Assembly (NCBI RefSeq): GCF_964204865.1
Contig: NC_135251.1
Span: 11,222,001 to 11,286,000, forward strand
Direction of reading: 5' to 3'
DNA from: Styela clava
Lineage: Eukaryota
DNA: 64,000 nucleotides
Shown here: positions 1 to 19,543 of the stretch, piece by piece
Numbering within the stretch: the stretch's first letter is position 1
Layout: every line of letters starts with the position of its first letter
Notes under the pieces: generated by a model
Seen by the model: the letters and a program-made list of their open reading frames with translations, nothing else
Database searches by the model: none
What the model was told of the DNA's origin: nothing
Made by a program: the position numbers and the translations under genes

Positions 1-1371
1 GATACTTCATTCTAGCAATACAGACTAAAATACAAATTATATATATGAAAACCTCCGAAAGCCTATTGATGAGAAAGGAACTTGCCTGTCGGTGTGAATA
101 CTGTGTATCGGAATCAATTTTATATAAGCCTCTTTACAGCTAGCTTAAAGTGAAAGAAGTATATAATTTGATACCAAATTGCAAATATATTTTCGATTTC
201 AAATTGTATGAAGCAATATGCACCATGCCTAGGCCGACGAGAAAACGACCTAGAGAATTTGAATTGCTTTAATAAAATAAATAACTTCTGGTGTGTTATT
301 TTCGTAATTTCAAAACACCTATATTAATCGGAATAGGGTTCTTCGTATCAAAACGCTAAATTCCTAAACTTGTTCGTTATTTTTATAAATATCTTCGAGT
401 TTACATATCGTGCTGCTAATTTCGAATATCTGATAATGAATAAATTCAACTGCTCATCCCATCTCTAATAAATTTCGCCACATGACCAATGTAGTGGCGT
501 AATTGTTGCATCCATTATTTAAAAAAAAATGCTAAAATGGAACAAAAAGAATTTACACAGCTTTGTGTTTTATTAGGTTTTACTTCCGTTGTTAAAATAT
601 AAATTTCGCTTGTTGAATCATTCCGACCCTGAACGCACCCTCCAGCTTGTTAGGCAAAATCAATTGAGCGAAGGTAAAAGCTTTTGACTAGAAATATCTC
701 TAGTGTAGCAAATTCGTTCAAATTTTAAAATCTGGACAAAAATCAGTTGATACACAAAGTTCTCTAATATTCGATTTAGTATATTTCAGTTGTCACTTAG
801 TACTTCATCTTGTGAGTGAGTTTGTTTTTGTTGAACGAGGTTGTGTAACAGCGCATTTGTATCAGGAACAAGAGAGCTATGCTCAGATATATGGGCAAGA
901 TAACCAGAGCGAAATGGTCCTTACCTTAAAAAACCACAACATAACGGATAAAATAAACTACGTTCTGATGCAGCATAAAGTTACAAACAGTAGCTCTGAC
1001 GAAATCTCTCGAATCAATTTGTTATTGCGGAGGGAGAAGCGACAATCTGAAAGCAGCTTGAAACTTGTAAATAATTGATATATGAATTACATCACTTAAC
1101 TTCCAGCTGACCGGCCGTCTGTCGAAAAAGAACACCTGCTCGCGACTTTCTCCGTGCATTATTATAGATTACAACAGGTAAATTAATTCAATTAATCCGT
1201 CCTGTCATTTCTATATTTATCGCAGAAACTTTAATGTTGAATGTGACAAAGTGACGAGTAAAATAACTCTGTCTCTGATAAATATATTCTTTCATACTCA
1301 ATAAACATAATACCTTTTTGAAAAATCGTCTTTTTAAATGGGTATCATTCACACACATATTTGTCGCAGTG

Positions 1372-1574
1372 GGTGACCGTGCAATTGAACCCACGTACAT
1401 TTAAACCCATGTGTATATCCACTGGTTTAATCTATATGCGGGTGCTAAAACCCATGGGTTAGGGTTAGTATGGGTTCAACTATCCGAAAAACAAAAAAAA
1501 TTCCATAGGTGCAATAGCATACAGGTGCAATTGTCATGGGTTCAAATGTACGTGGGTTCAAATGTAATGGAACC
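1372..1574 (+). mobile_element. 203-bp MITE, family A (GG..CC ends, 9-bp TSD, telomere-like core)
   Basis: About 40-bp imperfect TIRs built of TACATTTGAACCCAC units, internal GGGTTAGGGTTAG, perfect TSD GTCGCAGTG. Other copies at 42323-42525 and 61025-61212. Confidence 0.9.
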
Positions 1575-3759
1575 GTCGCAGTGTATTTCACAACTTGAAA
1601 TTAAGACATCTTGCAATATTCAATCAATGCAATATTCATTCAAATGGTTGATATTTGTCCAATTTCAAATTCAGCGCGAATGAAAATGCCCAATCGACAA
1701 TCCAAACTTTTGCATTAAACAATCTCAAATGCTTCCTAAATGTTCCCTAAGCAGACCAAACTCTGTATACAACATTTCGACTACTTCTATACCTGACAAA
1801 TCAGTCGGAAATGGAACTTCCTCCTTTGGTACCTATTCGGCCTCACTTCAATTGAATTCAACAATTGGATACTATGAAACACCAACGACCCGATTTTAAC
1901 CTTTTACAATAGTTCTATAACCATAACAAAATGTGCGAATTCTACAGAAATGGCATACGATATGGTGGCCACAAAATGAATAATACTTTCTGCAGTTTCA
2001 TTTGCACATTGCAAAATTTGGCAAATCCAAATGAAGTTTTGTAGAAATTTATTTAAAACATAATAATATTATTTATGATTTCCGCTATTTAAAGCAATTC
2101 ACTATCGATAAAATCGTAGATTATCTCCAAAACTTTAACATGTCCTTCTTTTAAAATTTAACATTGAAGCAAAGTACCCAATGAGAACAACAATACATTA
2201 TGATATGTTTCTGCAGAACAAGATGAACAGTGCTTTCAGCTAAATGCTACTCTTACATTTTGCAATCCTTTATGCCAGAGGTGGCCGTATCATCGACTGG
2301 GATTGACTAAAATCTTCTTAACACTTTGCAATCGACTGATCGATAATAAAGCCACACACAAAAATAAATTAGTACTAAAAATTCTTGGCTCTTTCAGAAT
2401 TAATACAAATTAACAGTTAAAATGGATATTCTGATATCACTGCTGCCGTTGTGAATGAAATAAATCACACTCCAGAGTATTATCGTCTTTTGGCTATATG
2501 CATCGCATTTTCTCCTCTTATAACGCAAAACAATCTCTCCGTGAGCATCAGTTGAGGAGAATTTTTAGAATTTCGGTTCTGGTCGATAGCGATCGACGTG
2601 TTGGCCACCCCTGCTGCTCCTCATATTGGACCGTTGTGACTATATGCGATAGGCGATCATATTGTTTGCGCATAGCAATATAATAAATCAAATTTGCTGA
2701 CGGCATCCGGCGGTGACGTTTTTACTAAACATTAATCATTTATAATTAATGATCCTGCATGGAAAAGAATTAAAATTCTTGGTTGGATCAAGCTCGACGA
2801 GACATAAGTTGTAAATATCATTGTATAAATTTGGATTGCCAAATCAATTTCTGTCATTTGAAAACTACTCGGGATCATATTCTTAACGCCTATCTTGAAA
2901 TGTTAAAATTCTCTGTTATTTTATTTACATTCAGACAACTATTTTTCCCACGTCTGACTCTGCACTCATATAGAAAAATATAATATATTGATTTGAAAGC
3001 TATTTAAAATGAAAATCAATGTCGCTATTATTCAAATCATTCGTTTCAGAAACAAATTTACATAAATAATAATTTTTCCCCATTGAAAAAAAAAGTACAA
3101 CTCGCTGCAAATAGAAATCCCTTTAATTCTGCACTCCCAGTATACCAATATTTGTATTTGGGAACCTCTCATTTGCCTTAAAAGTATCGGATATACAGTA
3201 TACAAGTATACAGTATAACCTCAGCATCCAAACATAACAACAAAGCATCGCCAGACTGATCGATTTAAATTTTCTCGTTCGTTAATATGATGCATAGTTA
3301 GTGCCAACACGATTTCAAGACTTATCGTATTTAGTAAAAATAACATGATCTCTTTCAACGAAATAGTAAGTATATTTGTGAGCTTTCGTTAGATCATGGT
3401 CTAACTTCTTCAAACAATACAAGATATAACTGTAAATATAAAAGATCATATAAATTTAGTCTATTGTTGATTTTCCTATAACTGGATATGGATGCTATCG
3501 TATCATCTTAGAATAGCCGGTCTAACTGATGTGGTTGGGTTGGGGTTCGTCTATTTGTGTAGTTTCCTTTGTTTGTTTTTGAACCTTATTTGTTTGTATT
3601 GTTGTTGTTGTTTTGATAGTACTGTTTGTCTTTTGGTTTTATATTTGCGTTAAAGCCACTTCTCCGTTTGAGTTTTAATCTTTTCTATTGATTCCCTGTG
3701 GTTGCCGAGTCTTCATTTTGACATACAGTTATCGAATTTAGTCAACGTTTTGAATAGCT

Positions 3760-4045
3760 CCACGGGGCGGGTGCTTCAAGCTGAGAGTTGAGAAAACGCA
3801 ACCACACCTCTGCTTACCCTGCGTGGGTTCGCAGGTTCGATAATAATTAATCGAGGAATAATTATGTGCGAGCAAATTGATGGACTCCTCGTCGTCGTAG
3901 GGTGGTTTACGCAATCGGTGGCAGGTTGCACTGTTACGGTTTTCTCTACCATAAAGTCCACGCATCTGCAACAAACGCTAATTAAACTAATTCCACACCG
4001 GACATGGGCTTGTAACCGGACGATAAACTGTGTTTCGCCCCCGAG
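3760..4045 (+). mobile_element. Probable tRNA-derived SINE family (3 diverged copies)
   Basis: B-box-like GGTTCGAT at about 3833. The body (TGGACTCC..CGTAGGGTGGTT..ACCATAAAGTCCA.GCATCTG) recurs at about 62725-62935, and a 3' part recurs at about 22360-22500 ending AATCCTATC. Confidence 0.55.
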
Positions 4046-5130
4046 ATAAATATGTAAATGCTATCCTAAACAGAAAATTTCATCAGGAATGAATAAAAAA
4101 TCGAGAGTCATTTTATAACAGCTGTATGAAACCTGTCTCATCAACGAGTTCGTCGCTTGCATGATAATTACACGATACCTAATTATACCTGTACTATTAT
4201 GCTAATTACTTTCCTAGTGTTATTATGGAGAAATGGTTTCAATCGGCTTTCGAGTAAAATAGTTTCTATACGAGAAATGCGTAGTAATTGTAGGTGTTGA
4301 TTCAGACACGCGCCACTTGTGCTTCGCAAAATTACAATTACTGGCTTTCTGCTGGAAAGTATAAAACAAACGAGAAGCTGTATATAGCCAGGGCCGGATA
4401 ATGCGTTTTACATTCCCCTAAGTACTGACTTTGGTGCCCTAAATATCTATATATATATATATATTAGTATAAATGAATGCCGAAGACTCTTTAATCACTT
4501 AGGATAGTAATATTGAAACTGGTGATATTTTTAGGAATAAATCTCATACCTACAAACATTTATACAGTGGTTTAAAATGATATCTGAGCACGACAAACAG
4601 GCAAATATTTACTCCAATCGGGCTAAAATTGAGGTCGGTCTCTTCTGACTAACTCAAATTATTTCATCCAACACTGAGGCACCGTTAAAATTAGCTATGG
4701 AAAATGCTGTGCTGCTGCCATTCCCTTGCTTCCATAAGCACGTATAGCCTGAACATGACTTTCTACTGTGTTAGCTCTATCTGAGAGGATTTAATTGTGC
4801 ATGCAAGTAATTTTGTGTTACATTTCCTAAAATATTATCAATCAACTTGAGTATGTGTATTATGCGACAAAATGTCACAGCGCTGGTTTAATTCCATAAC
4901 AAAGGACACGTCGCCCCACTCGGAAATGTCATCTATGCATTTTTTATGATTTATATTCTTTCAAAAATTCGGAAATGACAGTATGATTGTCAGCGGAAGG
5001 TTATCAAAAACGTGAGTCATATTGAATGAAAGTGGAATTTTAACCTTCAATTTCCAAAAACACCCAATGTGTTTCAGTGCAGTGGGGACTATACCATTTT
5101 ATTTATCTAAAATCTCTTTTCTTACGTATA

Positions 5131-5240
5131 CGGAGTGTCTAAAAAATTGTGCCCGACCTCACAGTAGTATCAACTAAATATTTATTTAAACTTACAATTG
5201 TTATCACTACAAAATCGGGCGAGATCCTTTGGACACCCTG
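5131..5240. mobile_element. Small decayed Tc1/mariner-type MITE
   Basis: TA|CGGAGTGTCTAAA ... TTTGGACACCCTG|TA. Confidence 0.55.
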
Positions 5241-6986
5241 TATAAGTGAAACATATTTTAATCATATACACTCACAATGAACATTTTCCTTTTCTAACAA
5301 ACTTATCGGTAATTCAAAGCAAGTTATCATGAAGAAAATTTAAAGAAAGACAAATCTATTTTAATCCAACAAACGTTTAGTCGTGACACCGGGTCATGTT
5401 AGGTCTCCGAAATGTGTAATCAATCGGATTTTAATGATCAATACCAGGCAATGCGCATATTTACTAGTAATCATTCAAAGCAGTGGTTCCCGAATTATTA
5501 TGGCACATTCCTCCCTCGTACCATTTGAAGCTCCTAATCCTCCCCACATATAATTTTATTTGTAATTTGTTGTTATTCAAGAACAAATTTTGCAATACGT
5601 CATACATGCAACTCACAGTCGCATATATATATACGTACATTACAATATTGCTGCATACGCAATAAACATTAGTGATACTACACGCAAATACAAAGTATAC
5701 CCCAAGTGTTAAAAGGTAAATAAATTCCAAATTTCCGAGAATAAATATATTTTCCTTTATAGCAATATTTTTATCAACTTTCAATTAGTTTTCGTTTTCT
5801 ATGGCCTCAGCTAAAGCATATCGATGTTTCAAGTAAAATTGAACAATTCCGCACACCTATATGTCTATGTACATACACATATGAATCACTTTAATATTCA
5901 TATAACTATGAAATAATGTCTGAACTCACTTCGCTGTGCTTCAGATTTAATTTGGTTTAAAGGTTCAAAATAATTTCTCATTACTAACTAATAATTAAAC
6001 AGAATGAACTCGAGTAATCGGTGAGGTATTTATACAATGATAATTATACACCTCTAAGACGACTTGATACTTTGTTGTCTGATATAGATTTCTTGTACGA
6101 AATCCTTCCTCTGACCCTGAAAGAATTGAAATTGCTTAAAGAGCGCGCCCGTTTCTGTCTATTTCCTGTTTCATTGCATAGGTATATTATACAGGCAAGT
6201 TGAGCTAATTATTAGCAAAAATATTTGACTGAAAAATCGATTTTAATTAGCATGAGTGGCTGTGGATTGTTTTTTCCTTTTTACACGTACAGCAATGCGT
6301 ACAGCACAATGCGTATTTATATGGTGCCTTGTACGTCATATAGTAAAGACTTTCACCGCACATACACATGCACATACACATTTGATTGTTCTGGGATTTC
6401 CATCAAGAATGTTACAGAACCTTGAATCTGATATGAATATTCAATAAATCAAAATTTTCCATCGGTATCTGTCGCTATGGAAACGGCTGTATATTTAATT
6501 AAACAAGCATGAACTATCCTATACTGAATAGAATTTTTATTATATTGAATTCCAACCCTTTCATTCTTACTTTCCATACTTCAGATACAGACGTGACGCA
6601 CAAAATATTGAAAAATATGCCGACTTCGTTTGTCAAATGGCTATTTGAGTCTATAGCTTATAATAATATGCTTCAACAGCTAACCGGTATCAAGTCCATG
6701 TAAAGCGTCGAAGTACTTAACAGCACTTCAGACAATCGTAATTACTATGAAGAAAAATTAGGAAAGCCATATATAGTTGATATCTCGGATGTCGAATATT
6801 TTAAAATTCAATTAACATTATGGATTGCAATCAAGTTATGAGTATTTGCAATAAAGTTGGGTATTTGTGTGAAGTATTGCTTCGGTAAACGAATGGTGAG
6901 TAGATATATTGCCACCTAAATACAAGAAACTTCATTGGACAGATCAATAATAGACAAAATAATTAAATTGGTAACAACAACTAATA

Positions 6987-7098
6987 GACGCTCCGGAAGT
7001 ATTTGTACCAAGATGACGCACAACCTGAACAGTTCTAACCTGGTACACATGCTAAGTTCAGGTTGTGAGCCATCTTGGTACGTATACTTCGGGAGACC
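6987..7098. mobile_element. About 110-bp fold-back MITE related to family B
   Basis: Near-palindromic; TSD AACTAATA/AACTAATG. Second copy at 56470-56579. Confidence 0.8.
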
Positions 7099-9671
7099 AA
7101 CTAATGAACTCTTTAGGCATTAAAATGCTTATAGATTTCCATTTAGTTACAAATTCTCTTGCTTTGCCCGAAAAATACCAACGACCAAAATAATAGGATA
7201 AATCCGCGGAATGTCAAAATATTACTTTTGTTTGTTTATGGTTATGTTTATGGTTTATTATGTATAAAGAAACTTTTTGTCTTTGAAATAAACTAAAACG
7301 GCATCATAATGCCATTTCAACAAACTATGTATTCCATATAATTTACTGACAATGGAGATAATAATTCTACAGACGATCTTACGGACGAAACGCCTTTTAA
7401 ATGAACCTTCTATCTAGAGTTTCATATCAAGTTTTGATAATCTGTACCATTCAATGGTTAATTGTAATGTATTTTACACTGCCTGGTGTCCATCGTGCGA
7501 TATCGCCGTGATAATAAAACGTACATAAAAACAGTCAATTTAATATCTATTCATAAATCATAAAAGGTTCTAAGATCTTGTCACTGCATTAGTTGCTCAT
7601 AACTTCGCTTTGAGATCATTTTTTGCTTGGGAATGAGTGCATGGGACCTTGCTTTTAACAAATTCTCCTATAAAAAAGTCTTTCCGTACGATCTCCGCAA
7701 TCATTCTCACTGGACACTTCCAAAATCACTTTTACACAGACCATACCTATTTATACGCGGCTCTTTATATACTGTAGTGACAAACTATATGCTTCAAGCT
7801 TTACGTTAGGTTTTTTTGACGAAAACCCAACACAAGACCAATCTTCATTTTCGAACAATTCACTAAACATTTTCTCTAAAAATATTCAATATATATTCAG
7901 TCAATAGCTTTTGACCTAAACTCTATACTAGACTCGCCTTTATTTTGGAACAATTCACTAAACATTTGCTTTAAGAATATTCAACCAATATTTCCAAAAG
8001 TTCAACAACTCATCTCGTTAAATTTTATGAACTAGACATTTTCTACACTGAACAAAGCCGGATTTCCAGACACAAAAGCACCGAGGGAGCCTATACGCGA
8101 CCGCAAAGTAGATTTGGAAAGTGGAATTCTTGTCGGTTGTTGTTATTTAAATTGCCTCCGATTGCCTGGTTGATAATAACCATCGGTTTCCAACAACAAA
8201 ATCCAAACATTCGTAGGAAGTAATGTAATCACAACAAGATTATATCTGGTCATACAAAGGAAAAGCATTCTATAACTATATTGGTTAATTTGAATAAAGT
8301 AATTCTCAGTTCCGCTTCTACCGTTGTTTTGATTATACTAGTAGTACTCATATTCGAAATGTTAAAACAACAATTCGGTACAAGTACTTGATAATTCCTT
8401 TATGACCGATTTATTGTAGCTTTATTTTTCGTAAGGTAGGAGGCACATCTTTGTTTAGATCACGGCCATTGCGTCAACTCAAAAGTATGTTTAAAATCAA
8501 GACTTCAAATATCCAATGAGTTTCCAAGCTCAATATTTAAATGTCAAAAAGTTCCAATTTTAAATTTCAGTTGCTCAACCTAACCTAGGCGATGAACGAT
8601 GCTACCAAAAGTCATTTAGGCTACATTGTATACTTACACCTGGTGCACTTACTAGTAATAATTTATCGCAAACTGTATTTCATAACCATATCCCAGATTA
8701 CCGTTTTAAATGAGTCTACTATATTATTCCAGAACTCAGTCTTATCCACACTGAAGTATCTGAACAACCCTAATGATAAGTGTTTCTAACAGTTGTGGAG
8801 TGCCATTATACTTTAAATGACGCACAATAGCTCTTTAGTGAAACTACAGTAGTGCGCTGACCATATCCCAAATATCGACAGCGAATTTAGGTACTAAGAT
8901 AGCGTAGTCGTTTTTATTTAAATATTTTGGAAGTATATCCAATATTTTATCTATCCAAACGAGCGTAGAAACCAACTGGCAGCAACTACCTCCCTATTAT
9001 TATAAACATATTGTAAATACGTAACGTACACGTTTTTTAGATACTTCAGGGAGAACAAATACTTGTTGTATATATATCCGTATTTTAGGCTAATTTCAAT
9101 TAACTTTACATTTCTACTTCGAATAAGATCTAGTAAAACATGGGCCATTCTTGTCATGATATCTTAGGTATTATATTGCAAAACCATTATCAAGATATTC
9201 TAAAGGAGTGAAACTGTGTAACAATAACTATTCAAATAGTCCATGAGCTTTTAGATCATGGGAAGAAACTAGAAATAAAAGCCACTCCACATCAAAACAA
9301 ACAGAGGTATTGTCGTTACGAGTTTAGTCGTCGTGCAAAACGAACAAATTAAAAAAGTGCTAATAATATTTATATCGCAGATATCATTAAAACAAGAAAA
9401 TAATTTGCTAACAACACTTTTTTTGACATTTTTGAGTTAGTTTCCATCACAATTTTCGTCACGGGCTCATGATGTTGAACTCTATTATAATGAAACTCAA
9501 TTTTGACCGGTTACAGTATCATTCGAAAACTAGTTTATCTGTCAACCTAATCAATGTTTTTTTTTATTTTTATGTTTATCTATTGTCTGGCTTCCATTTT
9601 ACATGGCACGTTTCCCAGACCTACAAGAATATTACGAATCCAATTTGATGAAGCTTGCTGTAGGTAGAGCA

Positions 9672-10240
9672 ATGGTATCAGTTTATTAACTCTCGTTGAG
9701 TATGCGCTATTCAACCATTTATGAAGGTACACGTTTCCCTGTTTTAGGTTCACCCAAGTTTAACACAATATTGTGATTCGAATATATAATCTCCTGGTCC
9801 GAATTAAAAAAAAAGAATGAATGAGATTTGTCATCACAACAGAGATATTTCCATAAGCAGAAAGCATTCTATAATGCAATCATACAGAGGTACACATAGC
9901 GTGCGACAACTGTGGCGATACAAAAAGGTTTCGTTGAACGTGGAAGTTTGGATATCCGCGGTGAAATATAGTGTTACAGAAGTACAGAGATGGGTAATGG
10001 AAAGACTCCATAGCGTAAAATTATTTCAGAGAACCTTCGTCGAAACCCTGGAAAAGCTCCACCGAACCGCAGGGGTTCGATCGAACCCAGGTTAAGAAAG
10101 ACTGCTGTATGGTATCAGTTTTACTGTCGTTGAGTATGCGCTATTTTACCCTCCATGAAAGCACGTGTATTAGGTTCATCCAAGTTCAACACAATATTAG
10201 GATGCAATAATATAATCTTATACAACGAATGCAATAAAGA
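9672..10240 (+). repeat. Local diverged direct duplication (about 125 bp) separated by a hAT right-end fragment
   Basis: ATGGTATCAGTTT..CGTTGAGTATGCGCTATT..TAGGTTCA.CCAAGTT.AACACAATATT..ATATAATCT at about 9672-9793 and about 10109-10218. Confidence 0.75.
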
Positions 10241-10853
10241 ATACCCAATATGATTATCTTCCAATTAGCGCCCGAACTGCAAACCCTTCCCATAGACGAA
10301 ATGTCGTGTCGCTGTGCTTATTTTAAACGTATTGTGATCAACTGTGTTTTTCTGAACTTGTCTCTCCAAAAGATATTCCAGTCATCATACGAGTTCGGCT
10401 TCGAACTCTCATTCGTTTACAGTCTGTGTATCTATTGGACTGAAAAATTTTTTTTTTCCCAAGAACTCCAGTTATGTGTTCCTCAATACCTCATTGCTGG
10501 TATTGCCTAAATGTTTTAGGTCTCACGCTTAGTCGATATTTACTAGCGCATAATTCTACAGTATAATCTATCGCCCGTCCTCTCAAAGGGGGCCCATAGA
10601 GCAGTTTGTTGGAGGGGCCACAAGGCTTAGCGAGCGCAAAACCGATTTTACTTTACCGATTACACTTTACAAAAAAAAAACTCCCCGTTCTTATAGTTAA
10701 GGTTATTTAACAGGATGTTTCAAATTCGTTGAGCATGAATTGTTTAAAAATAATGGGATTTGAAACCGACCATTCAAATTTCTGAGTGAGTACGTGTGAC
10801 CTTGCTTTGTCACCGAGTTTCGTTAAACTGATACCATCCGTTAAACATCCGTT

Positions 10854-10984
10854 GTTTCGAATTTCTATACAGAAAAACTTCATCAGGGCATGATATGGAA
10901 AGGACACAAGTGGATATATATGTCCTATACAAGTCCTTTCCATATCATGCCATGATGAAGTTTTTTTGTATAGAAATTCGAAAC
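10854..10984. repeat. About 130-bp near-perfect palindrome
   Basis: About 52-bp arms GTTTCGAATTTCTATACA..GGAAAGGAC and GTCCTTTCC..TGTATAGAAATTCGAAAC (2 mismatches) around a short spacer. Confidence 0.9.
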
Positions 10985-11518
10985 GTCGGCAAATTACATC
11001 GTTTTGCTAACACCGGTTGTGCTTCATTTATTATCAACATGAATTTACCTGGTGGCAATCATGCACAATGCAGACCGAAGTCAAAATATTGTAAATGACT
11101 ATAGAACACCGGATAGAACTTCGAATTTAGTAGCAATGATTGGTGAGTGACCTCATAACGGCGGCTAACGTCATAACGGAGGTTTTTGATAGCACATAGT
11201 ACGGTACCTAATTGAAAACCTCGAAGTTAGGACGTTTAGTAATTTGACAGTAGGCCTATATATAATTTGAGAAAAGGTGGATCCTCGTCACAAAACTTTT
11301 GGATTGTTCATCCTTCTGCAAAGAGCATTAATTCGTGCAATCTTAACACTGTTGAGAAAGAATCGATGATTGAGCTTTCACATTGTCACAGTTTTGGATA
11401 TATCTTGAAAACGAATATCCCGAGCTCAGTGACAGAGCCATTTAATTACTGCTGGTTATTGTTACAACTTACCTCTATGAGAAAAGCTTTTCATTACTTA
11501 TCGATCTTAAGATCGGTA

Positions 11519-11660
11519 NNNNNNNNNNNNNNNNNNNNNNNNNNNNNNNNNNNNNNNNNNNNNNNNNNNNNNNNNNNNNNNNNNNNNNNNNNNNNNNNNN
11601 NNNNNNNNNNNNNNNNNNNNNNNNNNNNNNNNNNNNNNNNNNNNNNNNNNNNNNNNNNNN
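11519..11660. other. Assembly gap
   Basis: Run of 142 N. Confidence 1.
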
Positions 11661-12243
11661 GCGAAAGCGAGATTGAATCTGCTCCGGATTTTGCATGTGC
11701 ATTCATCTTATCTCGGACCAGAAGCCTATTGATTTTGGGCGAATTATGTCGTATAATTAGCTAGTTATCAATCAATTATTGATATAGTGATCTAGATTTT
11801 TGTAAAGCGAGAGAATTTTGAAACCCGCCGAGTGTGTGTGTGCGATGCGCAGTCCGCAAGTTACAAGAGCGGATGAATCGAAACTGCAGTTTCTGTTTTG
11901 GGGGATCCCCTAACTATCGATCGATAAGTCTTCGGTTTCCAACCGATATTCTCGTTGTTAACTCTCATCAAGACCAAACAGAGAAATCGTTTGGGAGTCA
12001 ACGCTCTACTTCGCCTTGCAGAAACTTCATTAGAACTACGTTTAACACGTACAATATCAAAAACAAAGCAGTAAATTTCTCATTAAATTGGATTGTCTCT
12101 TTTGCACCGCCTACTTCTGTCGTAATTGCATTCTTTTGATTATACTTTGTGTTCATTATTGGTTAATTTTGAAGGTCCGCAAAATTTGTTTTAAAATTTT
12201 ACCGGTCCGCGAACTGAAAAATTTTGAGAACCACTGCTTTAGA

Positions 12244-13603
12244 GCTGTGGTTTCCAAAATGGGGGTCGCGTGACGATTTTCCAGGGTCGTCAAATTTCTG
12301 TCAAACAAGCGCACACAAGCGACCAAGATTTGAAAGTTAGAATGTGGAATTTGTTTTGGTCGCCAAGTATCGCAAAAATGCCTAACTTCTGTTTTTTTCA
12401 GTAATAATTTGGCACATTTTTGTCCAAACGGCACCGAAAATGATCAATAAAACTTTCTTGTAATACTTAACCTTTTCAGCTAGTCAGCGGGTTTTCGTTT
12501 ATTAATTTGTGCAACCAGGGAAGTTGAATGATGTGCTTGGAAGTCTAAATTGTTATCTGTTTTTTCTACCGGTTTAGTCGGGAATATAAGCTAACAATTT
12601 TGGCATCATAAAAAACTAAAAATCGAATGCGGATTCTATTAGCCTGGGATGGCTATGTCTGATAACTAATTATTAATGTTATGGCCTAACAATATAATTC
12701 ATACCGGGTGTTTTTGCAACCAGCAGTATTACAAAAAATGCCGCCTTGATGTCAAAAAATTAGTAATTACCCTCCTGTACATCATATTTGGTAATCAATC
12801 TATCTGGAGTTATTTTGTAAACATCGGTCCGAAAAAAAGCTGACGAATTCAAACAGATTTTAAACTGAATGTGAGAGGCAAGATACCACAATGCTTGAAT
12901 GATATGTTGGCAAGTTGTGTCAGTGTCAAGAAAATATAATTGAAAACGTCATTTTAGAATCTTATGAGCCATGAGCACTTTACAGAGTTAAGATTTGGCT
13001 TTGAAAATCTTATCGATGTTCAAAAGCACTTAAATTTGCGGAAGCCTTTTTTCCATTATAAAGAGTTTGAAATCTTACTCTAAATTTAAATATAGAAAGA
13101 CTTCTGCTGGTTTTTGCATGATAAACACTGATCAATGTGTTTGCACAATAAAAGTGGTTGTTCTGTATTGTATGTTTAGCTATTCCCAGCACTATTGCGG
13201 CATGCGAACAACGCTAAAATAATTTCATGGCCTCCGGAGCCGACAATCTTAGACCACCAAGTTCTAGCATAACAAAAGTAAAATTTGTTTAACCTAATTG
13301 GACACGTTTAGTGGCCATAACGATCGTTTCAAAATTTTGTTGTTATTGTTATTTTCTTTCGTCATTATCATTAAAAAATCGCTTTTCTCTTCGAATACTG
13401 GACCAATTGCTTTGAAATTTTCAGTGGTTAAAGATAAAATTTTTCTCCAGAAGGCTATTACTTTTTTTTCGCTATGACGTCATCAAAATTATTGCCATTG
13501 GGTCCTTATATTTGAGCATAGCTCTCTTGTTTTATCTAATATGGCAAAATTTGTTTTGAAATTTTACCGGTCCGGGCGAACTGAAAAAGGTTGAGAACCA
13601 CTG
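12244..13603. mobile_element. Cluster of decayed or nested hAT-Charlie MITE pieces
   Basis: Left end C(T)GTGGTTTCCAAA at 12244; right ends GAGAACCACTG at 12236 and 13603. About 12250-12450 has a diverged inverted copy at about 19245-19440. Confidence 0.55.
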
Positions 13604-13987
13604 GTATAGACTATAGAGCATATAAAACCACACCGTGAAATTTTACAAAATTAAAATTAGAACCGATGTCTTTTTAATATGGTTATGGTATATTTGAAGA
13701 CTCTGTGAAGTAATCTGTAAGTTTTATCTCTATAATTCAGTCATTGAATTGAAAGAATTTCTGTTTATAAATAAACTTTGATGTTTTTGTTCCCCGAGGC
13801 ATATTGTGCTGTATAGCTGTATATGGAAGGCTGACATATTTTTTAAAAATGTGGTGAGGAATCGGTGACAAAGTTTGGCGTTGTTTGCAAATTGAATGTG
13901 CGAGAAAAGATAAATTAGGCATAAATGGAGCATGTTAATACAGGTTAAATTTATATTTTAAACTTACACTCGATTGGCAGATTCAAA

Positions 13988-16900
13988 ATGATTAGCATTA
14001 TTTCGAAGACGAACGTGATTATACTGACTTTGGTTTCGATTATTTCGTGCGAGGATTTATTGGACTGTAAACTAAAGGAGGGTTGCCACATCGCTCAATG
14101 CGATCCGGCTCCAAGGTCGTGGATCAATCATAACTTTAACCTTAAAGAACAAACCAACAGAAATGAGTATCCAATTACGTGTAAAGATAGAAAAGCAGGA
14201 TTATCAGACGATGCTATGAGTATTATATCGGCATTGGCGATCGGTGGCGGTGGAAGGCAAGGTCAAAAACCTGGACCCCAAGGACCTAAAGGTGAGACCG
14301 GAAAAAAAGGTGCAAAAGGTCAAAAAGGTGCACGAGGTATAACTGGGACAATTGGACCAGAGGGTGAAAAAGGGCAGCGTGGATTAATCGGACCGAGTGG
14401 AATGAAAGGCTCTAACGGCCAGTCGGGACAAACCGGTCCTAAAGGTACAAAAGGCGACTCAGGCGGAGAGATAACCAAAGATATTTTACAATCAATTATT
14501 GCAGGTGCGTTGAAATCATCAACAGTGTAAAGTGTATTATCTTGTTCCACTCAAAGTTGGCATCTACATTATTTAGAAGTATCCAACTGCTGACTTGCCC
14601 ATAACCGGCCATTGTCAATTTGTCCTGTATTAACTAATTATAGAAAATGCTTTGTATTTTTGTTCCTATTCTAATTCGCGTAATTTAACTTAGCTTTGAC
14701 AACTTTGCGAATAGTTGAACATTCATTTTTGTTTCGCTGATCCAGGATTATGCTCGTATGGATACGCAAGTCGATGCTACCTTCCACTAATGAACCATAA
14801 AGTCTCACACTCCCAAGCTGCAGAAATTTGTGTTTCGATCGGAGGAAAACTTGCTGACATTCACAGTAATAAACATTTGGAAGGTCTGAAGCAACATATA
14901 GTTAACTATAGGGATAAAGTCAACTTTCGAACATCTTTTTGGACAGCAATGAAATTCGAACGCCCTGTGAGTGTTTTTTATTTTATACAATTATGAATTA
15001 GAAATATTGGCAGTTCCACCTTAAAAATATTTAATACACAAGAAAAATTTCCAATAATGTTTTTTTTGCACTTTGAAATATCTATCATATTTAATTGTAT
15101 ATACCGTAGATTACTGATATACAATTATCATAGCAAACCAGCTGCTGTAAAAATGCTGAAAGCATGGAGGTACGTTACTGCTGCAGCCCGTAATCACTGG
15201 CAGCAAAGATTACAAGATACAAAAAGAGTTTTTCGATCGTTTCTCTGAACTCTTAATGTGGTTGTTGTGATTTTTGTACACCTAGTGCAGTGATTTTCAA
15301 CCGGTGTTCCGCGGAACACTGGTGTTCCGCGACAGACCTCCAGGTGTTCCGCGAAAAATTGCTTTTTAGAAGTATTATGACGTCATTCGAATAATATAAA
15401 TAGAGTCGATTTGAAAACGGCGAGTCAGACTTTTGGAAAGTCGGTATAAAAAACTTGTAAGAAATGACAGGCCATATTCCCTTTTAATAGACTTTATCTC
15501 GGCGTGTATGTTTAGTGATCCATTCCATTCTTGACCGAATATTGTTTCAAAAATGTGAGCATTATACTCGACCATGAATGGAGTCATCATCGGAGTTGAT
15601 TACATTCGTTGCATTTTGAAGCTTTTCTTGCAGTAATAATTAGGGCGTGGGCATCATCAAAATCGTCAAGTGAAGTGTTGAATTTGCAAATTGCGTAAAT
15701 AAAATTGTGAATTTGTAGGTAACGATTTTAGCTATGATAATGGTCGCAGTATTGTTTTGTTGGGAAAGAAAACGTTAAAACTCGAGGTGATTAATTCTAA
15801 TCAGCGTCTAATCAGCACAAAAGCAATTGGGCAAAAAATTGTTTACATTTTTTTTGGCATCAGGTCGCGCATGGAGGATATCGTTAAAGAAGTGCTCTTC
15901 ATCGTCATCTCGCCACGTAGAAATGCCTTTATTTCAGCTTTTAAATCAACATTCAGGATTCACGCAATCACAGATTTATCTAATCACAGTATCTAATTGA
16001 TTTACTCCGGAAATAACACTGACACCAGTGTGGTGCATACGAAACTCAATTATCGTCTTGATAAATGTGTACATCTCGTTGTCGATAATGATAATATTAT
16101 TCGCTAAACTGGGACGTTTAATTTGCAAACGACGATAAGTTAGATCCAAGCCAACGCAAAGGATAAAAATCAGAATAAAATTAAGTTGGAATTTAAAATC
16201 GCTCCCTAATGTCATTAACATCTGTCGCTAATGTGAACGCATATAGTTATACCAAAATATGGAACTTCGATCTCCGCCGTTCGGCAAGAATTAATACTTG
16301 CGCACAAGAACAAAGGCGGTAATATGAAAATGTTCAGGGAGCAAAAAAAGTAGCGATTATGACGAAATTAAACAGTAAGAATCACTTTGCTGCCAATTTT
16401 CAATGTTTCTATTAATTTCCAAATCGACCTCCGACCTTCTGGACTCCTGATGCGTATAAAAAAAACGCGAGAAATTGAGAGCCGTTGAGAAAAAGATGCG
16501 TGTTTGTCTCTCCTCAATTACCGAATAAATTATTTGAAACTCACCGGAACAGACCTAAATATTACACTAAAATACCGTTTCTGTTTCTAGCTATCGTAAT
16601 CATAGTATTCATAAGCAAACTTGCAAAAACATATATTTGTACCGTACTTTAGCTCTTGTAGCTCTGAAACGGAATGTGTCACGTCTTTTCCTAAAGTTGA
16701 CAAGCTATATTATTGATTTCGTTATTTTATTTTCATGCCGAAATGATCGACGTCAGTTAATTGCATAATATAGTTTATTTCCAAAAATTTCGTTTGGTGT
16801 TCCGCCACAATTTCAGATTAAAAAAAGTGTTTCGCGGTACAAAAAAGGTTGAAAATCACTGACCTAGTGGACCAAGTGATATCAAATTTACGGTACTCCC

Positions 16901-18638
16901 GCAGTGTGTGTACCAGGTTAGGGTAAGCAATAATTTTATTCAGATTTTCCTCATTTTAGTTCTATTATGAGTTCGGCGACTGTCTGTGTTAGCCCATCGG
17001 TTTAAGTCCCTTCACAAAACTTGATGTAGAGTAGGCGAACAAAATTAGTTACCTCCATATTGGTACGCATAATTCTGGAGCGCCAAATTCACAGCATTTG
17101 AAGCCTTCAAAAAGCTTTTTCAATTTTGTTTGAGTCCCGATATTTTATACAAACTTCACTTTAATATTTCATTTCATGAACTAACATTTTAATTAATATC
17201 GAAACATTTTATTCCGTCATACTAATCCGTTGATCTATTCAGCAAAGTAGGATCTCGACTGGGGCCTGAACGTTGCCCTTTTGTTTTGTTTGCCCGTTTA
17301 GTATTATTTTGTTGTTATGAAAAAAATGACTTTTCTCTTTAAACTGGACAAATTGTTCTGGAATTTTCATGGGTTGAAGATTGTATTTTTCTTTAAAAGT
17401 TTATTACTTTCATTTATTTTGTTAATTTTTGTGGGTTCTATGAAACTCGTTCCCATATATTTGAGCAGCGCTCTCTCACTTACTAAAGCAGCGTTGTTTC
17501 GTTTTCTAATTATTGTGTTCGAAACTCAATTATCTTATTTCAGACATCACGTATTCTTCTAAGTCAGTGGTTCTTAAAGTATGGGTCGCGACCCAAACAT
17601 GGGTCGCGGAAGGTTTAAAAATGGGTCGCGACAAGGTCGTCAATGCAAGGGCAATTTAAGAGGAGAAGGACGAATTTTCAGCTTCCCCAATGTTTCAATT
17701 TAGCTTCTAAACTCTGGTAATGAAATATAAAATTTCATTCACGGAAAGAACTGTCTTGAGCTCATTGTTACATCACAATTCTGATATGCCAGTCACGTGT
17801 ATTATTTTTATGGTATCGGTAACCATGCACGTCGCTTGTCGTTGTGTTGACCGCATGGAATGTCGTCTTAGTGGATTAAAATAACCAAAAATGGGTGTCT
17901 TTTTGGTAATGAAAATTGTAATAGACGACGCAATGAAAAAGCTCGCTTCTCGACATTAGATTATTCAATATCTAGAGAAAATGTGACTTCATCTCGAGGC
18001 ACCATTTACCGCGAACGAAGCAATGCGTGCACATGTGACGAGTAAAAAGTTGTATATTGGCCAGAGATACCGAAGGCCAGTTAGGATGTCGTGTTTGCGA
18101 CGGACAGCGGACGCCTTTTCTGCTACAATTCGCGACAAGGCACTTGTGCGAGCGAGGATATTTGGCACTGACTGTTATCAAAACTAAGCTCGCAATCGCT
18201 TCGATACCCGTGACAACTTGCGTATGCGTTAAGTAAAATAGAGCTGTCTGTGTATTGAAGATATAAGAAAAAGGAAATTTCAGTTTCATCAATCTCACTG
18301 AGTCAATGGACTGTTTCTAATAAATAGTTGTCTGTATTTGAGTCAAACTGTACTAACATTAAAAACACATTTTGCGTTTTTTAGGATTGGGTCGCGAGTA
18401 TTCATAAAACTCAGATTTGGGTCGCGCTTGAAAAAGTTTAAGAACCACTGTTCTAAGTGACAACACAGAAGCAAAGTTTAAATATAAATGGTATCGAAAT
18501 TTTCCACATTTTGGTTTTGGTTACGACGAAATTGCCTGGCAACCGCAGTCGGATGAATTCCTCAACATGATCGAACTACAAACATATCATCCTCTCTGTG
18601 AAATTGTTCTTTACGAGAGTGATGTATTGAAGAAGTGA
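13988..18638 (+). CDS. Collectin-like secreted protein (signal peptide, Cys-rich N-terminus, collagen region, C-type lectin-like domain); last exon interrupted by a hAT insertion
   Basis: Exon 1 is 13988-14504 (hydrophobic signal, 21 uninterrupted Gly-X-Y triplets GPQ..GDS, donor gtgcgt, phase 1). Exon 2 is 14746-14966 (LCSYGYASRCY..AAEICVSIGGKLADI..FWTAM, donor gtgagt). Exon 3 is 17544-17564 plus 18459-18638 (TSRILLS|DNTEAKFKYKWYRNFP..HPLCEIV..TGA), in frame once the element and one TSD are removed. About 312 aa. AATAAA at 18675. Confidence 0.85.
15288..16861. mobile_element. Non-autonomous hAT (Charlie-type) element in collectin intron 2
   Basis: Perfect 15-bp TIRs CAGTGATTTTCAACC, perfect 8-bp TSD ACCTAGTG (15280-15287, 16862-16869), subterminal GTGTTCCGC repeats; 1574 bp. 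Confidence 0.93.
16892..17084 (+). mobile_element. MITE family B variant (about 195 bp, high copy number)
   Basis: GGTACTCCC..CCAGGTTAGGG..CAAAATTAGTTACCTCCATATTGG..CTGGAGCGCC with TSD AAATTTAC/AAATTCAC. Further copies or fragments at about 20282-20465, 20753-20968, 21905-22095, 32178-32392, 60166-60280 and 63181-63220. Confidence 0.85.
17565..18450. mobile_element. Non-autonomous hAT (Charlie-type) element inserted in collectin exon 3
   Basis: Perfect 14-bp TIRs CAGTGGTTCTTAAA/TTTAAGAACCACTG, perfect 8-bp TSD TTCTAAGT (17557-17564, 18451-18458), subterminal TGGGTCGCG repeats at both ends; 886 bp. Confidence 0.95.
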
Positions 18639-19543
18639 CTGTATACAAGACATCAGACGTATGTTTTACAATTTAATAAACCAGTGGTTCTCGAACGTTT
18701 TGAGCCGCGCCCCCTATTTTAGTATTTGTTAAGTCTCGCGTCCCAACTCAAAAATAACTAGCTAACAACCAGCTACAAATAGCAATTAGTAGGGTGAAAG
18801 TGTGTTTTATCCAAAAATCACGTTGAAAATACTAGGATAGAACGTAAATACCCAAAATAAAGAAATGTAAATATTCAAAATAGGGCGGGCAAGATCAAAT
18901 CTATTGAATATTTTTATTTTTCACGCCTCCTCAAAAATTGTCTACGCCCGCCCCTGGTGAGGCGGCTCGTAGATTTTGGACACGTAAACAAAGCGCTTTA
19001 GCTACTGTCGAAACCTAAAGTGTAAATACTTCGCCAAACACCGTATGGTAATTAATATCAAACTTATAAAGCACCTAATTAGGAGCCGATCACCAATTAA
19101 AGCAATTTTGCTTTGTATATTCCATAACCAAGCGGCTTTCATAACAAACATAATTTCTCGCAATCCTATCAAAAAGTCCAATTTGCGTACCAGCGGGTCA
19201 ACAACTTATTCGGATGTAACATGATCAAAAAAGTTATAAAAAGAATCGAGCAATTTTGGCGCCGTTTGGACAATACATGGTCCAGTTATTGCTCAAAATA
19301 TCCGAAGTTGTTAATTTTACGGTACTTGCCAACCAGCACAAATTTCACTTTCCAATTTTCAAATCCTATCACTCGTGTGCGCATGTTTGACAGAAATTAG
19401 GCGACCGAGGAAAATCTTCACGCGACCCATAGTTTGGGAATTTTTATTTCAAAATGGTTAATGGCGTAAAAGACCCTTTATGTTATTTGCATCATAAACT
19501 TATTAATAACAACAACAAAAAGAAGTTGGCGCCAAATATAAGT

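What the first reader, a model, noticed from the sequence alone, without database searches (positions are those of the whole stretch)
17544..18638. Young hAT insertion splits collectin exon 3: null allele or a transposon becoming an intron
Seen: removing the element plus one TSD restores a perfect ORF (ILLS|DNTEAKF), and the downstream half has no lesions, so the insertion is recent. Read-through stops at TAA 17616-17618 and truncates the lectin domain. The insertion also creates a donor-like GTCAGT at 17563 (TSD GT plus TIR CAGT). Splicing it to the exonic CAG at 18466-18468 gives CTA A|AA GCA, in frame, replacing SDNTE with K. The nearer AG at 18456-18457 would frameshift. Inference: CAGT-ended hAT elements landing after GT could be tolerated as new introns, an introner-like route of intron gain.
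Basis: partly seen in the sequence, partly recalled or inferred. Interest (0 to 1): 0.75.

Follow-up and report, generated by a model that had tools for sequence, protein, structure and literature searches.

The report
Recent transposon insertion truncating a lectin gene
A young 886-base cut-and-paste (hAT) transposon sits inside the last coding exon of a collagen-plus-lectin gene of the sea squirt Styela clava in this assembly, while messenger RNA from another animal carries the same exon uninterrupted, so this looks like an ordinary recent gene-breaking insertion and not a new intron.

Summary
An 886-bp non-autonomous hAT element (17565-18450) has perfect 14-nt inverted ends and a perfect 8-bp target duplication. 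It splits exon 3 of a three-exon collagen + C-type-lectin-like gene of Styela clava.

The current RefSeq model of this assembly (270 aa) reads into the element and stops at 17616-17618. The element belongs to a very young family. At least 40 near-full-length copies were scored, and 35 of 39 have perfect 8-bp duplications, all with TA in the middle (Buster-type hAT).

The one RNA contig that crosses the site (run X6) joins exon 2 to an exon 3 with no element and a single copy of the duplication. No GT..AG intron can produce that 894-nt removal, so it is best read as an empty-site allele. An older RefSeq protein of the same gene (305 aa, "collectin-12-like") is also uninterrupted.

I saw no 17562-to-18469 junction and no other splice within the element. 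The proposed acceptor is weak, and the better acceptors inside the element lead to stop codons.

Verdict: a polymorphic, truncating insertion. "Becoming an intron" is unsupported, but it was not directly tested in a carrier animal. The scan reached the same conclusion for a similar case elsewhere in this genome (s1-817515).

The parts
13988..14504 (+). Exon 1 coding part: signal-like N-terminus, Cys-containing segment, Gly-X-Y collagen repeats, short neck. Donor CAG|GTGCGT follows 14504.
   Evidence: ORF. Pfam Collagen E=1.3e-11. Junction 14504|14746 seen in RNA contigs X5 record 10 and X6 records 16-18. Identical to P0001.
14746..14966 (+). Exon 2: first half of the C-type lectin-like domain. 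Donor CCT|GTGAGT follows 14966.
   Evidence: Sequence. Weak Lectin_C match (E=0.0068, below cut-off). P0001 sequence. X6 record 19 ends this exon at 14966.
17544..17564 (+). Exon 3, left stump (7 codons). It ends with the left copy of the target duplication.
   Evidence: Acceptor TTTCAG before 17544. The 13 letters 17544-17556 follow exon 2 in RNA contig X6 record 19 (table 5c).
17557..17564 (.). Left target-site duplication TTCTAAGT.
17565..18450 (.). Non-autonomous hAT (Buster-type) element, 886 bp, with no long ORF.
17565..17578 (+). Left terminal inverted repeat CAGTGGTTCTTAAA.
   Evidence: pair I5 (100% complementary).
18437..18450 (-). Right terminal inverted repeat.
   Evidence: pair I5.
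17582..17632 (.). Left subterminal TGGGTCGCG-type repeats (three copies, partly palindromic).
   Evidence: families D1 and D2, pairs I10, I14, I16.
18386..18426 (.). Right subterminal TGGGTCGCG-type repeats (two copies).
   Evidence: families D1 and D2, pairs I4, I11.
17616..17618 (+). TAA that ends the read-through frame. 17 element-encoded residues are added after native residue 253.
   Evidence: C-terminus of RefSeq protein P0001.
18451..18458 (.). Right target-site duplication TTCTAAGT.
18459..18638 (+). Exon 3, right part: 59 intact codons plus TGA. This is the second half of the lectin-like domain, including its last cysteine.
   Evidence: 74% identical over 53 aa to the C-terminus of P0034. 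Covered by RNA contig X6 record 19 from 18451 to 18536.
18675..18680 (+). AATAAA, the likely natural polyadenylation signal of the gene.
   Evidence: (position list). The function is inferred.

Best explanation
In the haplotype that was assembled, a copy of a young, high-copy, non-autonomous Buster-type hAT transposon inserted into exon 3 of a single-copy Styela clava gene. It was presumably moved in trans by one of the genome's many hAT transposases. The gene encodes a secreted collagen-stalk protein with a divergent C-type lectin-like head (RefSeq LOC120336707, formerly named collectin-12-like).

The insertion duplicated 8 bp of the exon and split the lectin-like domain after native residue 253 of 312. 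Transcripts of this allele are expected to read into the element and stop after 17 foreign residues. Because that stop lies in the last exon, the message should escape nonsense-mediated decay (inferred). The product would be a 270-aa protein lacking 59 C-terminal residues, including the last conserved cysteine, so the head cannot fold normally (inferred). The allele would be loss-of-function, or possibly interfering.

The insertion is not fixed. An otherwise window-like allele with the empty site is transcribed and normally spliced in another animal, and a more divergent uninterrupted allele was annotated earlier.

Shown: the anatomy, the youth of the family, the truncated annotated product, and the uninterrupted mRNA. 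Inferred: the fate of the insertion allele's RNA and protein, and its frequency.
For: Anatomy:
- Perfect 14-nt inverted ends and a perfect 8-bp duplication.

Family:
- 40 scored matches out of 408 candidates, at 95-100% identity. 38 of the 39 other copies are full length.
- Boundaries were found in 39 of 40 copies examined. 35 of 39 have a perfect 8-bp duplication. TA occupies positions 4-5 in 35 of 35. This is the Buster-type hAT consensus nnnTAnnn (passages of PMC3517528).
- Mean pairwise substitution divergence of 12 copies is 1.3%.
- hAT dimerisation domains: 150 scored hits above the Pfam cut-off, with open frames up to 903 aa.

Gene:
- P0001 (XP_077975275.1, 270 aa) lies on a contig of 31,344,463 bases, the length of the window's contig C2. 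Its tail equals the read-through translation.
- The gene is single-copy. Exon 3 has 1 strong match in the genome, and for exon 2 the next best match is 35% identical.

Empty site:
- RNA contig X6 record 19 (263 nt, depth 3.4) consists of 14803-14966, then the 13 letters of 17544-17556, then 18451-18536. That is exon 2 spliced to an exon 3 with one duplication copy and no element (tables 5c and 8).
- By direct reading, the nine possible cut positions for that 894-nt removal give no GT..AG pair. The closest are GT..AA and TC..AG.
- P0034 (XP_039260377.1, 305 aa) is in the same 90% cluster and is uninterrupted across the site.

Domain:
- P0034 passes the Pfam Lectin_C cut-off (23.4 against 22.6 bits, residues 192-266), so the insertion site at residue 253/254 is inside the domain.
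- In the ESM Atlas structure search, 9 of 9 listed rows are Lectin_C clusters, with TM 0.69-0.77 over residues 165-305.
Against: - Only one RNA contig, of low depth (3.4), crosses the site. Logan contigs drop rare forms, and 11,703 rows were not shown, so a minor spliced form could have been missed.
- The genotype of the X6 animal is unknown. The empty site at DNA level is inferred from the absence of a possible canonical intron and from a protein model of another annotation, not from DNA reads.
- The DNA-like run X1 gave no shown contig that decides between filled and empty site.
- P0034 is only 91% identical over exons 1-2, and 74% over the second part of exon 3. It is a very divergent allele, or less likely a paralogue absent from this assembly.
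- The window copy has 7 private substitutions and several private indels. "Very recent" therefore rests on the polymorphism and the perfect ends, not on identity to a source copy.
Confidence: 0.85

Rival explanations
1. In carriers the element is removed by the spliceosome using the GT made by the duplication plus the element end (17563) and the exonic CAG at 18466-18468. This gives an in-frame product in which five residues are replaced by one, so the allele is tolerated.
For: - The sites exist and keep the frame.
- Transposons whose ends and target duplications supply splice sites are documented (passages of PMC11282704).
- Styela clava is named among introner-containing taxa (passages of PMC12130899).
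- Maize Ds1, also a hAT element, can be spliced from exons (Wessler 1991, as cited in PMC5432752).
Against: - No 17562-to-18469 junction appears among the joints shown for X5, X6 and X8.
- The donor has C at +3 and A at -1.
- The acceptor has 10 of 20 pyrimidines, against 13 and 15 for the gene's own acceptors.
- The pyrimidine-richer AGs inside the element (exon resuming at 17704, 18303 or 18385) give stops or a frameshift.
- RefSeq models this allele as read-through.
- Only 1 of 35 perfect duplications ends in GT, so the family has no built-in donor.
Confidence: 0.05
2. The uninterrupted mRNA in X6 comes from the insertion allele. The element plus one duplication copy would be removed precisely at the RNA level by a non-canonical, inverted-repeat-guided splice, as in the transposon-derived introns of the larvacean Fritillaria borealis.
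For: - The removal is exact from duplication to duplication.
- Such introns are described in another tunicate (passages of PMC11282704).
Against: - The review states that those introns are efficiently removed only in F. borealis.
- The possible end pairs here (GT..AA, TC..AG, AG..TA and others, read) do not include the AG-AC or AG-AT types that the review names as most prevalent there.
- Full-length copies of this family are retained in RNA contigs of X5, X6 and X8 (records 14, 21, 29).
- An uninterrupted gene model from another annotation exists.
- The contig differs from the window by other letters, so it comes from another haplotype.
Confidence: 0.02
3. The empty site seen in RNA is a revertant. 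The element was once present in that lineage and excised, germinally or somatically, restoring the exon.
For: The family looks recently active and the genome holds many hAT transposase frames.
Against: From general knowledge of hAT elements (recalled), excision usually leaves footprints and does not restore the site exactly with a single duplication copy. The divergent allele P0034 is also uninterrupted, which fits an ancestral empty state.
Confidence: 0.03
4. Assembly artefact: a repeat copy was wrongly threaded into the exon during assembly.
For: The family is very abundant and its copies are nearly identical.
Against: - A misjoin would not create a perfect 8-bp duplication of exon sequence with the family's own TA-centred target pattern.
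- The copy has private differences: 7 substitutions, a 10-bp deletion and a 4-bp insertion.
Confidence: 0.02

Closest known systems
Buster-type hAT MITE-like elements (for example Mar of Drosophila willistoni)
   Same: No coding capacity, short inverted ends, mostly perfect 8-bp duplications with the consensus nnnTAnnn, and many young copies (passages of PMC3517528).
   Different: A different sequence family with its own TGGGTCGCG subterminal repeats, and longer than typical MITEs (about 890 bp). Its autonomous partner was not identified. One transposase-bearing locus (L041) ends in a TIR that differs at one position but has other subterminal repeats.
Maize Ds1/Ds insertions in exons that are partly spliced out
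   Same: A non-autonomous hAT element in a coding exon, with cryptic donor and acceptor sites near its ends (Wessler 1991, as cited in PMC5432752; that paper itself is not held).
   Different: Splicing of Ds1 was shown experimentally there. Here no spliced product was seen, and the sites are weak.
Introners (intron-generating transposons), including those reported for Styela clava
   Same: The species is named as introner-containing (PMC12130899).
   Different: No splicing of this copy was seen. The family's ends carry no good splice sites. Among the seven longest flanking frames that I tested, from 38 other copies with boundaries, only one copy abuts a recognisable coding domain, and that domain belongs to another transposon.
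Vertebrate collectins (the RefSeq name was collectin-12-like)
   Same: An N-terminal segment, a collagen-like stalk and a C-terminal C-type lectin-like domain.
   Different: The head is very divergent, barely above the Pfam cut-off. By reading P0034 and the window's frame, it has no EPN/QPD plus WND sugar and calcium motifs (QPG or QPQ instead) and lacks the inner cysteine pair. No relative outside the species was found.

Membership tests
hAT superfamily (Buster group) | 8-bp target-site duplication | tested here: met
   The window copy is perfect. 35 of 39 copies with boundaries are perfect and 4 have 1-3 mismatches.
hAT superfamily (Buster group) | Target consensus nnnTAnnn | tested here: met
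   TA at positions 4-5 in 35 of 35 perfect duplications. The consensus is as given in PMC3517528.
hAT superfamily (Buster group) | Short terminal inverted repeats | tested here: met
   14 nt, 100% complementary (pair I5). That hAT ends typically begin with CAG-like letters is recalled, not tested.
hAT superfamily (Buster group) | Mobilised by a hAT transposase that recognises the same ends | tested here: inconclusive
   150 scored hAT dimerisation-domain hits above the cut-off. Of the 20 loci fetched, only L041 has a matching 10-nt end, about 740 bp after the domain. Its TIR differs at one position and its subterminal repeats are different.
Introner (intron-generating transposon) | The copy is removed from mRNA by splicing at or near its ends | tested here: inconclusive
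   No junction inside or around the element was shown in X5, X6 or X8. The only contig across the site has the empty-site form. No RNA from a known carrier was available.
Introner (intron-generating transposon) | The element and/or its duplication supply usable splice sites | tested here: inconclusive
   18 frame-keeping GT..AG pairs exist, but their acceptors have only 8-11 of 20 pyrimidines, against 13-15 for the real ones. Only 1 of 35 duplications ends in GT. No species-specific splice-site model was available.
Introner (intron-generating transposon) | Many copies form introns of unrelated genes | tested here: inconclusive
   Only a rough scan of open frames abutting 39 copies was done. 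I sent 7 of the longest flanking frames to Pfam, and 2 of them (both sides of L005) hit, both to Tc5/Brinker-type transposon DNA-binding domains. No gene annotation was available.
Collectin | Collagen-like Gly-X-Y region | tested here: met
   Pfam Collagen E=1.3e-11 on exon 1.
Collectin | C-terminal C-type lectin domain | tested here: met
   P0034 scores 23.4 bits against the 22.6 cut-off. 9 of 9 structure rows are Lectin_C. The truncated P0001 scores only 15.5 bits, below the cut-off.
Collectin | Calcium and sugar site motifs (EPN or QPD, plus WND) and both conserved disulfides of the domain | tested here: not met
   Read: QPQ or QPG in place of the tripeptide, no WND, and one cysteine in the second half of the domain instead of three. 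The motif definitions are recalled.
Collectin | Alpha-helical coiled-coil neck and trimer formation | not tested
   The single-sequence AlphaFold2 model was unusable (mean pLDDT 35.3).

The most novel reading that the evidence does not exclude
In carriers, part of the transcripts of the insertion allele are rescued by splicing. That second pair leaves 18 extra in-frame bases. The locus would then be a segregating filled/empty polymorphism that catches a hAT element at the moment of becoming an intron, in an animal already reported to hold introners.
Probability: 0.06. Interest if true: 0.65.

Novelty: new member of a known kind. Interest (0 to 1): 0.22.

Why it matters
Practically, the current RefSeq protein of LOC120336707 is a transposon-truncated chimaera with 17 element-encoded residues. 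It should not be used as the gene's normal product. The older 305-aa model or an empty-site allele is the better reference.

Biologically, the locus shows that this roughly 890-bp hAT family has moved within the time span of present polymorphism in Styela clava, an invasive species. It also offers a natural loss-of-function allele of a secreted collagen-lectin, a possible innate-immunity molecule.

For the origin of introns it would matter only if carriers splice the element out. The evidence here does not show that. The mechanism itself is already published.

Tried and rejected
- **Close paralogue or alternative haplotig with the empty site in the same assembly:** none. Exon 3 has one strong match, and exon 2's next match is at most 35% identical.
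- **Alternative terminal exon:** rejected. RNA contig X6 record 19 and both RefSeq proteins join exon 2 to 17544.
- **Relatives of the lectin-like half in other species:** only P0001 was found. The search with exon 1 found only collagen-repeat matches beyond P0001.
- **Structure of P0034 by AlphaFold2 without an alignment:** unusable (mean pLDDT 35.3, pTM 0.21). I made no fold search with it and used the Atlas look-up instead.
- **Autonomous partner:** 20 transposase loci were scanned for the element's ends. Only L041 has them, with different subterminal repeats, so this is not settled.
- **Family copies in exons:** an open-frame threshold of 50 codons flagged 17 of 39 copies, which is not discriminating in this genome. 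I tested 7 of the longest frames in Pfam, and only L005 hit, to another transposon.
- **Filled versus empty site in the DNA-like run X1:** the rows shown do not decide it.
- **Earlier notes of the scan:** nothing at this place. A similar case elsewhere, s1-817515, reached the same conclusion.
- **Papers:** Huff et al. 2016 and Wessler 1991 are not held and are known here only through citing papers. PMC9860276 holds none of the words tunicate, hAT, Styela, metazoa, Oikopleura or urochordate. Searches turned up no paper on this locus or on this element family, but none of them targeted the locus or the family by name or sequence, so I make no claim that it is unpublished. The supplements of PMC12130899 (Dataset S2, SI figures) may name the S. 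clava introner family. I did not open them, since they are closed.
Full report
**What is in the sequence**

Reading 17000-19200 shows the following.
- An acceptor TTTCAG lies before 17544, followed by seven codons.
- The octamer TTCTAAGT lies at 17557-17564.
- An 886-bp block occupies 17565-18450. It begins CAGTGGTTCTTAAA and ends with the reverse complement of that motif.
- The same octamer lies at 18451-18458.
- After it comes an open frame of 59 codons up to a TGA at 18636-18638.

The repeat finder gives the two 14-nt arms as 100% complementary (pair I5). It also shows TGGGTCGCG-type repeats under both ends (families D1, D2).

The frame from 17544 runs 24 codons and stops at TAA 17616-17618. 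The frame arithmetic is right.

**The gene**

The window carries an ORF from 13988 with a signal-like start and Gly-X-Y repeats (Pfam Collagen, E=1.3e-11). A second coding block at 14746-14966 has a weak Lectin_C match.

A protein search with exon 1 found one near-identical protein, P0001. NCBI names it "uncharacterized protein LOC120336707 [Styela clava]", 270 aa. Its sequence fixes the model:
- exon 1 runs to 14504 (donor CAG|GTGCGT);
- exon 2 is 14746-14966 (donor CCT|GTGAGT);
- exon 3 starts at 17544.

The last 17 residues of P0001 are the read-through into the element. P0001 sits on a contig of 31,344,463 bases, exactly the length of the window's contig C2. It is therefore the RefSeq model of this very assembly.

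The gene is single-copy here. Exon 3's right part has one strong match in the genome, and the next best match of exon 2 is 35% identical.

I built no joined exon model and searched none. Exons were searched one by one, and whole-protein questions were put to database proteins as returned.

**A second, uninterrupted version**

The 90% cluster of P0001 has one other member, P0034. This is XP_039260377.1, "collectin-12-like [Styela clava]", 305 aa. It runs straight across the insertion point and ends in the same conserved C-terminal stretch as the window's right-hand frame. It is 74% identical over 53 aa there, and 91% identical over the 252 aa shared with P0001.

Its lower accession number, and the different size of the published 2020 assembly, suggest it was annotated on another individual's assembly. 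That assembly has 340 Mb in 710 contigs with 1.72% heterozygosity (passages of PMC7540406), against 377 Mb in 380 contigs here. This is inference.

**The domain that is split**

P0034 passes the Pfam Lectin_C cut-off (23.4 against 22.6 bits, residues 192-266). The truncated P0001 does not (15.5 bits).

In the ESM Atlas, the stored model of P0034, residues 165-305, aligns to nine listed clusters that all carry Lectin_C, with TM 0.69-0.77. My own single-sequence AlphaFold2 model was useless (pLDDT 35.3).

The insertion after native residue 253 therefore removes 59 of about 140 residues of the domain, including its last cysteine.

Read by eye, the domain lacks the EPN/QPD and WND motifs and the inner cysteine pair (motif definitions recalled). 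It has collectin architecture, but the gene is not a tested collectin.

**The element and its family**

A DNA search of the whole assembly gave 408 candidates. All 40 that were scored match at 95-100% identity, and 38 of the 39 other copies are full length.

I fetched all 40 with flanks.
- Boundaries were found in 39; L059 failed.
- 35 of 39 have a perfect 8-bp duplication. L007, L055, L064 and L070 have 1-3 mismatches.
- All 35 perfect duplications have TA at positions 4-5. This is the consensus given for Buster-type hAT elements (passages of PMC3517528).

Twelve copies differ pairwise by 1.3% on average. The window copy has 7 private substitutions and some private indels, a number similar to the other copies.

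The genome holds at least 150 hAT dimerisation-domain hits above the Pfam cut-off, some in frames of 546-903 aa. Of the 20 such loci fetched, one (L041) ends about 740 bp after the domain in a TIR one letter away from this one, but with different subterminal repeats. The superfamily assignment is therefore sound, but the autonomous partner is not identified.

**RNA and DNA from public runs**

Twenty runs were listed. I laid four on 13900-18900: X1, which covers introns and so behaves as DNA, and X5, X6 and X8, which were guessed to be RNA.

X5 and X6 are RNA. Their contigs join exon 1 to exon 2 (X5 record 10; X6 records 16-18). X8 has nothing on exons 1-2.

The key row is X6 record 19 (263 nt, depth 3.4). 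It consists of 14803-14966, then 13 letters identical to 17544-17556, then 18451-18536. That is exon 2 spliced to exon 3, and exon 3 carries one copy of the octamer and no element.

It is the exact empty site.

Removing 894 nt can be drawn at nine positions within the duplicated octamer. None gives GT..AG. The nearest are GT..AA and TC..AG (read). The contig also differs from the window at a few letters, so it comes from another haplotype. The simplest reading is an empty-site allele of the same allele type as the window.

No contig shown joins the left exon stump to the element. No joint at 17562/18469 is listed.

Caveats:
- These are contigs, not reads.
- The key contig is shallow.
- 11,703 rows and 5 joints were not shown.
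- No run is known to come from a carrier.
- X1 did not decide between filled and empty site.

**How the insertion allele is likely to behave (inferred)**

The read-through stop lies in the last exon, so nonsense-mediated decay should not apply (established rule). AATAAA/ATTAAA signals lie in the element at 17875, 18319 and 18358 and may end transcripts early. The expected product is the annotated 270-aa protein, with stalk and half a head.

- All use acceptors with 8-11 pyrimidines in 20, against 13 and 15 for the gene's two real acceptors.
- The pyrimidine-richer AGs in the element (exon resuming at 17704, 18303 or 18385) give stops or a frameshift.
- One pair is common to every copy of the family: GT at element bases 3-4 and the AG eight bases before the right end. 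It would leave 18 in-frame bases, but both of its sites are weak too.

**Comparison with what is known**

Splice sites there are brought by the element or co-opted from the target duplication (passages of the review PMC11282704). Transposon-derived non-canonical introns are described in the tunicate Fritillaria borealis (same passages).

Styela clava itself is named among taxa validated as introner-containing (passages of PMC12130899). Which family is meant is in the closed supplements.

Splicing of a hAT element from exons is old knowledge for maize Ds1 (Wessler 1991, seen only as cited in PMC5432752).

A rough scan of the other copies gave no sign that this family usually sits between exons.

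An earlier follow-up of this scan, on another transposon in another exon of this genome (s1-817515), reached the same conclusion as mine. I did not test that case.

**Verdict**

This is a real, young, Buster-type hAT insertion that truncates a collagen/C-type-lectin-like gene in the assembled haplotype. It is polymorphic in the species, and there is no evidence that it acts as an intron. It is an ordinary kind of event and a new instance of it, with a small practical consequence for the RefSeq protein.

Confidence in this reading is 0.85 and interest is 0.22. The intron-birth reading keeps a probability of about 0.06, pending RNA from genotyped carriers.

Noticed in passing
window 13973-14966 (X5 record 9): One RNA contig of run X5 (442 nt, depth 5.7) reads 14798-14966 and then jumps back to 13973-14245. 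The exact end of exon 2 is joined to the start of exon 1. This could be a circular RNA, a tandem arrangement in that animal or a library artefact. The letters before 13973 are not AG in the window.
   Followed up: no
window 12223-12236 (-), 13590-13603 (-), 18682-18695 (+), 54691-54974: Further ends of the CAGTGGTTCT type, with 1-2 mismatches to the 14-mer. One starts 2 bases after the gene's AATAAA. The pair at 54691/54974 looks like a complete element of about 284 bp. The gene sits in a neighbourhood rich in hAT-type elements.
   Followed up: no
P0001 versus P0034: The two RefSeq versions of this single-copy gene differ at 9% of residues over exons 1-2 and at 26% over the second part of exon 3. 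That is far above the 1.72% genome heterozygosity reported for the species. RNA contigs of X5 and X6 share some of P0034's differences (for example at 14141) but are window-like in exon 3. This suggests several old, recombining alleles at a lectin locus.
   Followed up: partly
L005:1143-2583: Another copy of the family is nested in an open frame with Brinker/CENP-B-type and Tc5 transposase DNA-binding domains, that is, in a pogo/Tc5-like transposon or a gene derived from one.
   Followed up: partly
L007 (G000:C10:15360534-15361426): This is the only copy whose flanking octamers differ at 3 of 8 positions. It may be the product of recombination between two copies, or of decay at a palindromic target.
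   Followed up: no
window 17565-18451 (X5 record 14, X6 record 21, X8 record 29): Other copies of the family are present nearly full length inside RNA contigs of all three RNA-like runs, at depth 47-94 and with foreign flanks. The family is thus carried in transcripts elsewhere in the genome.
   Followed up: no
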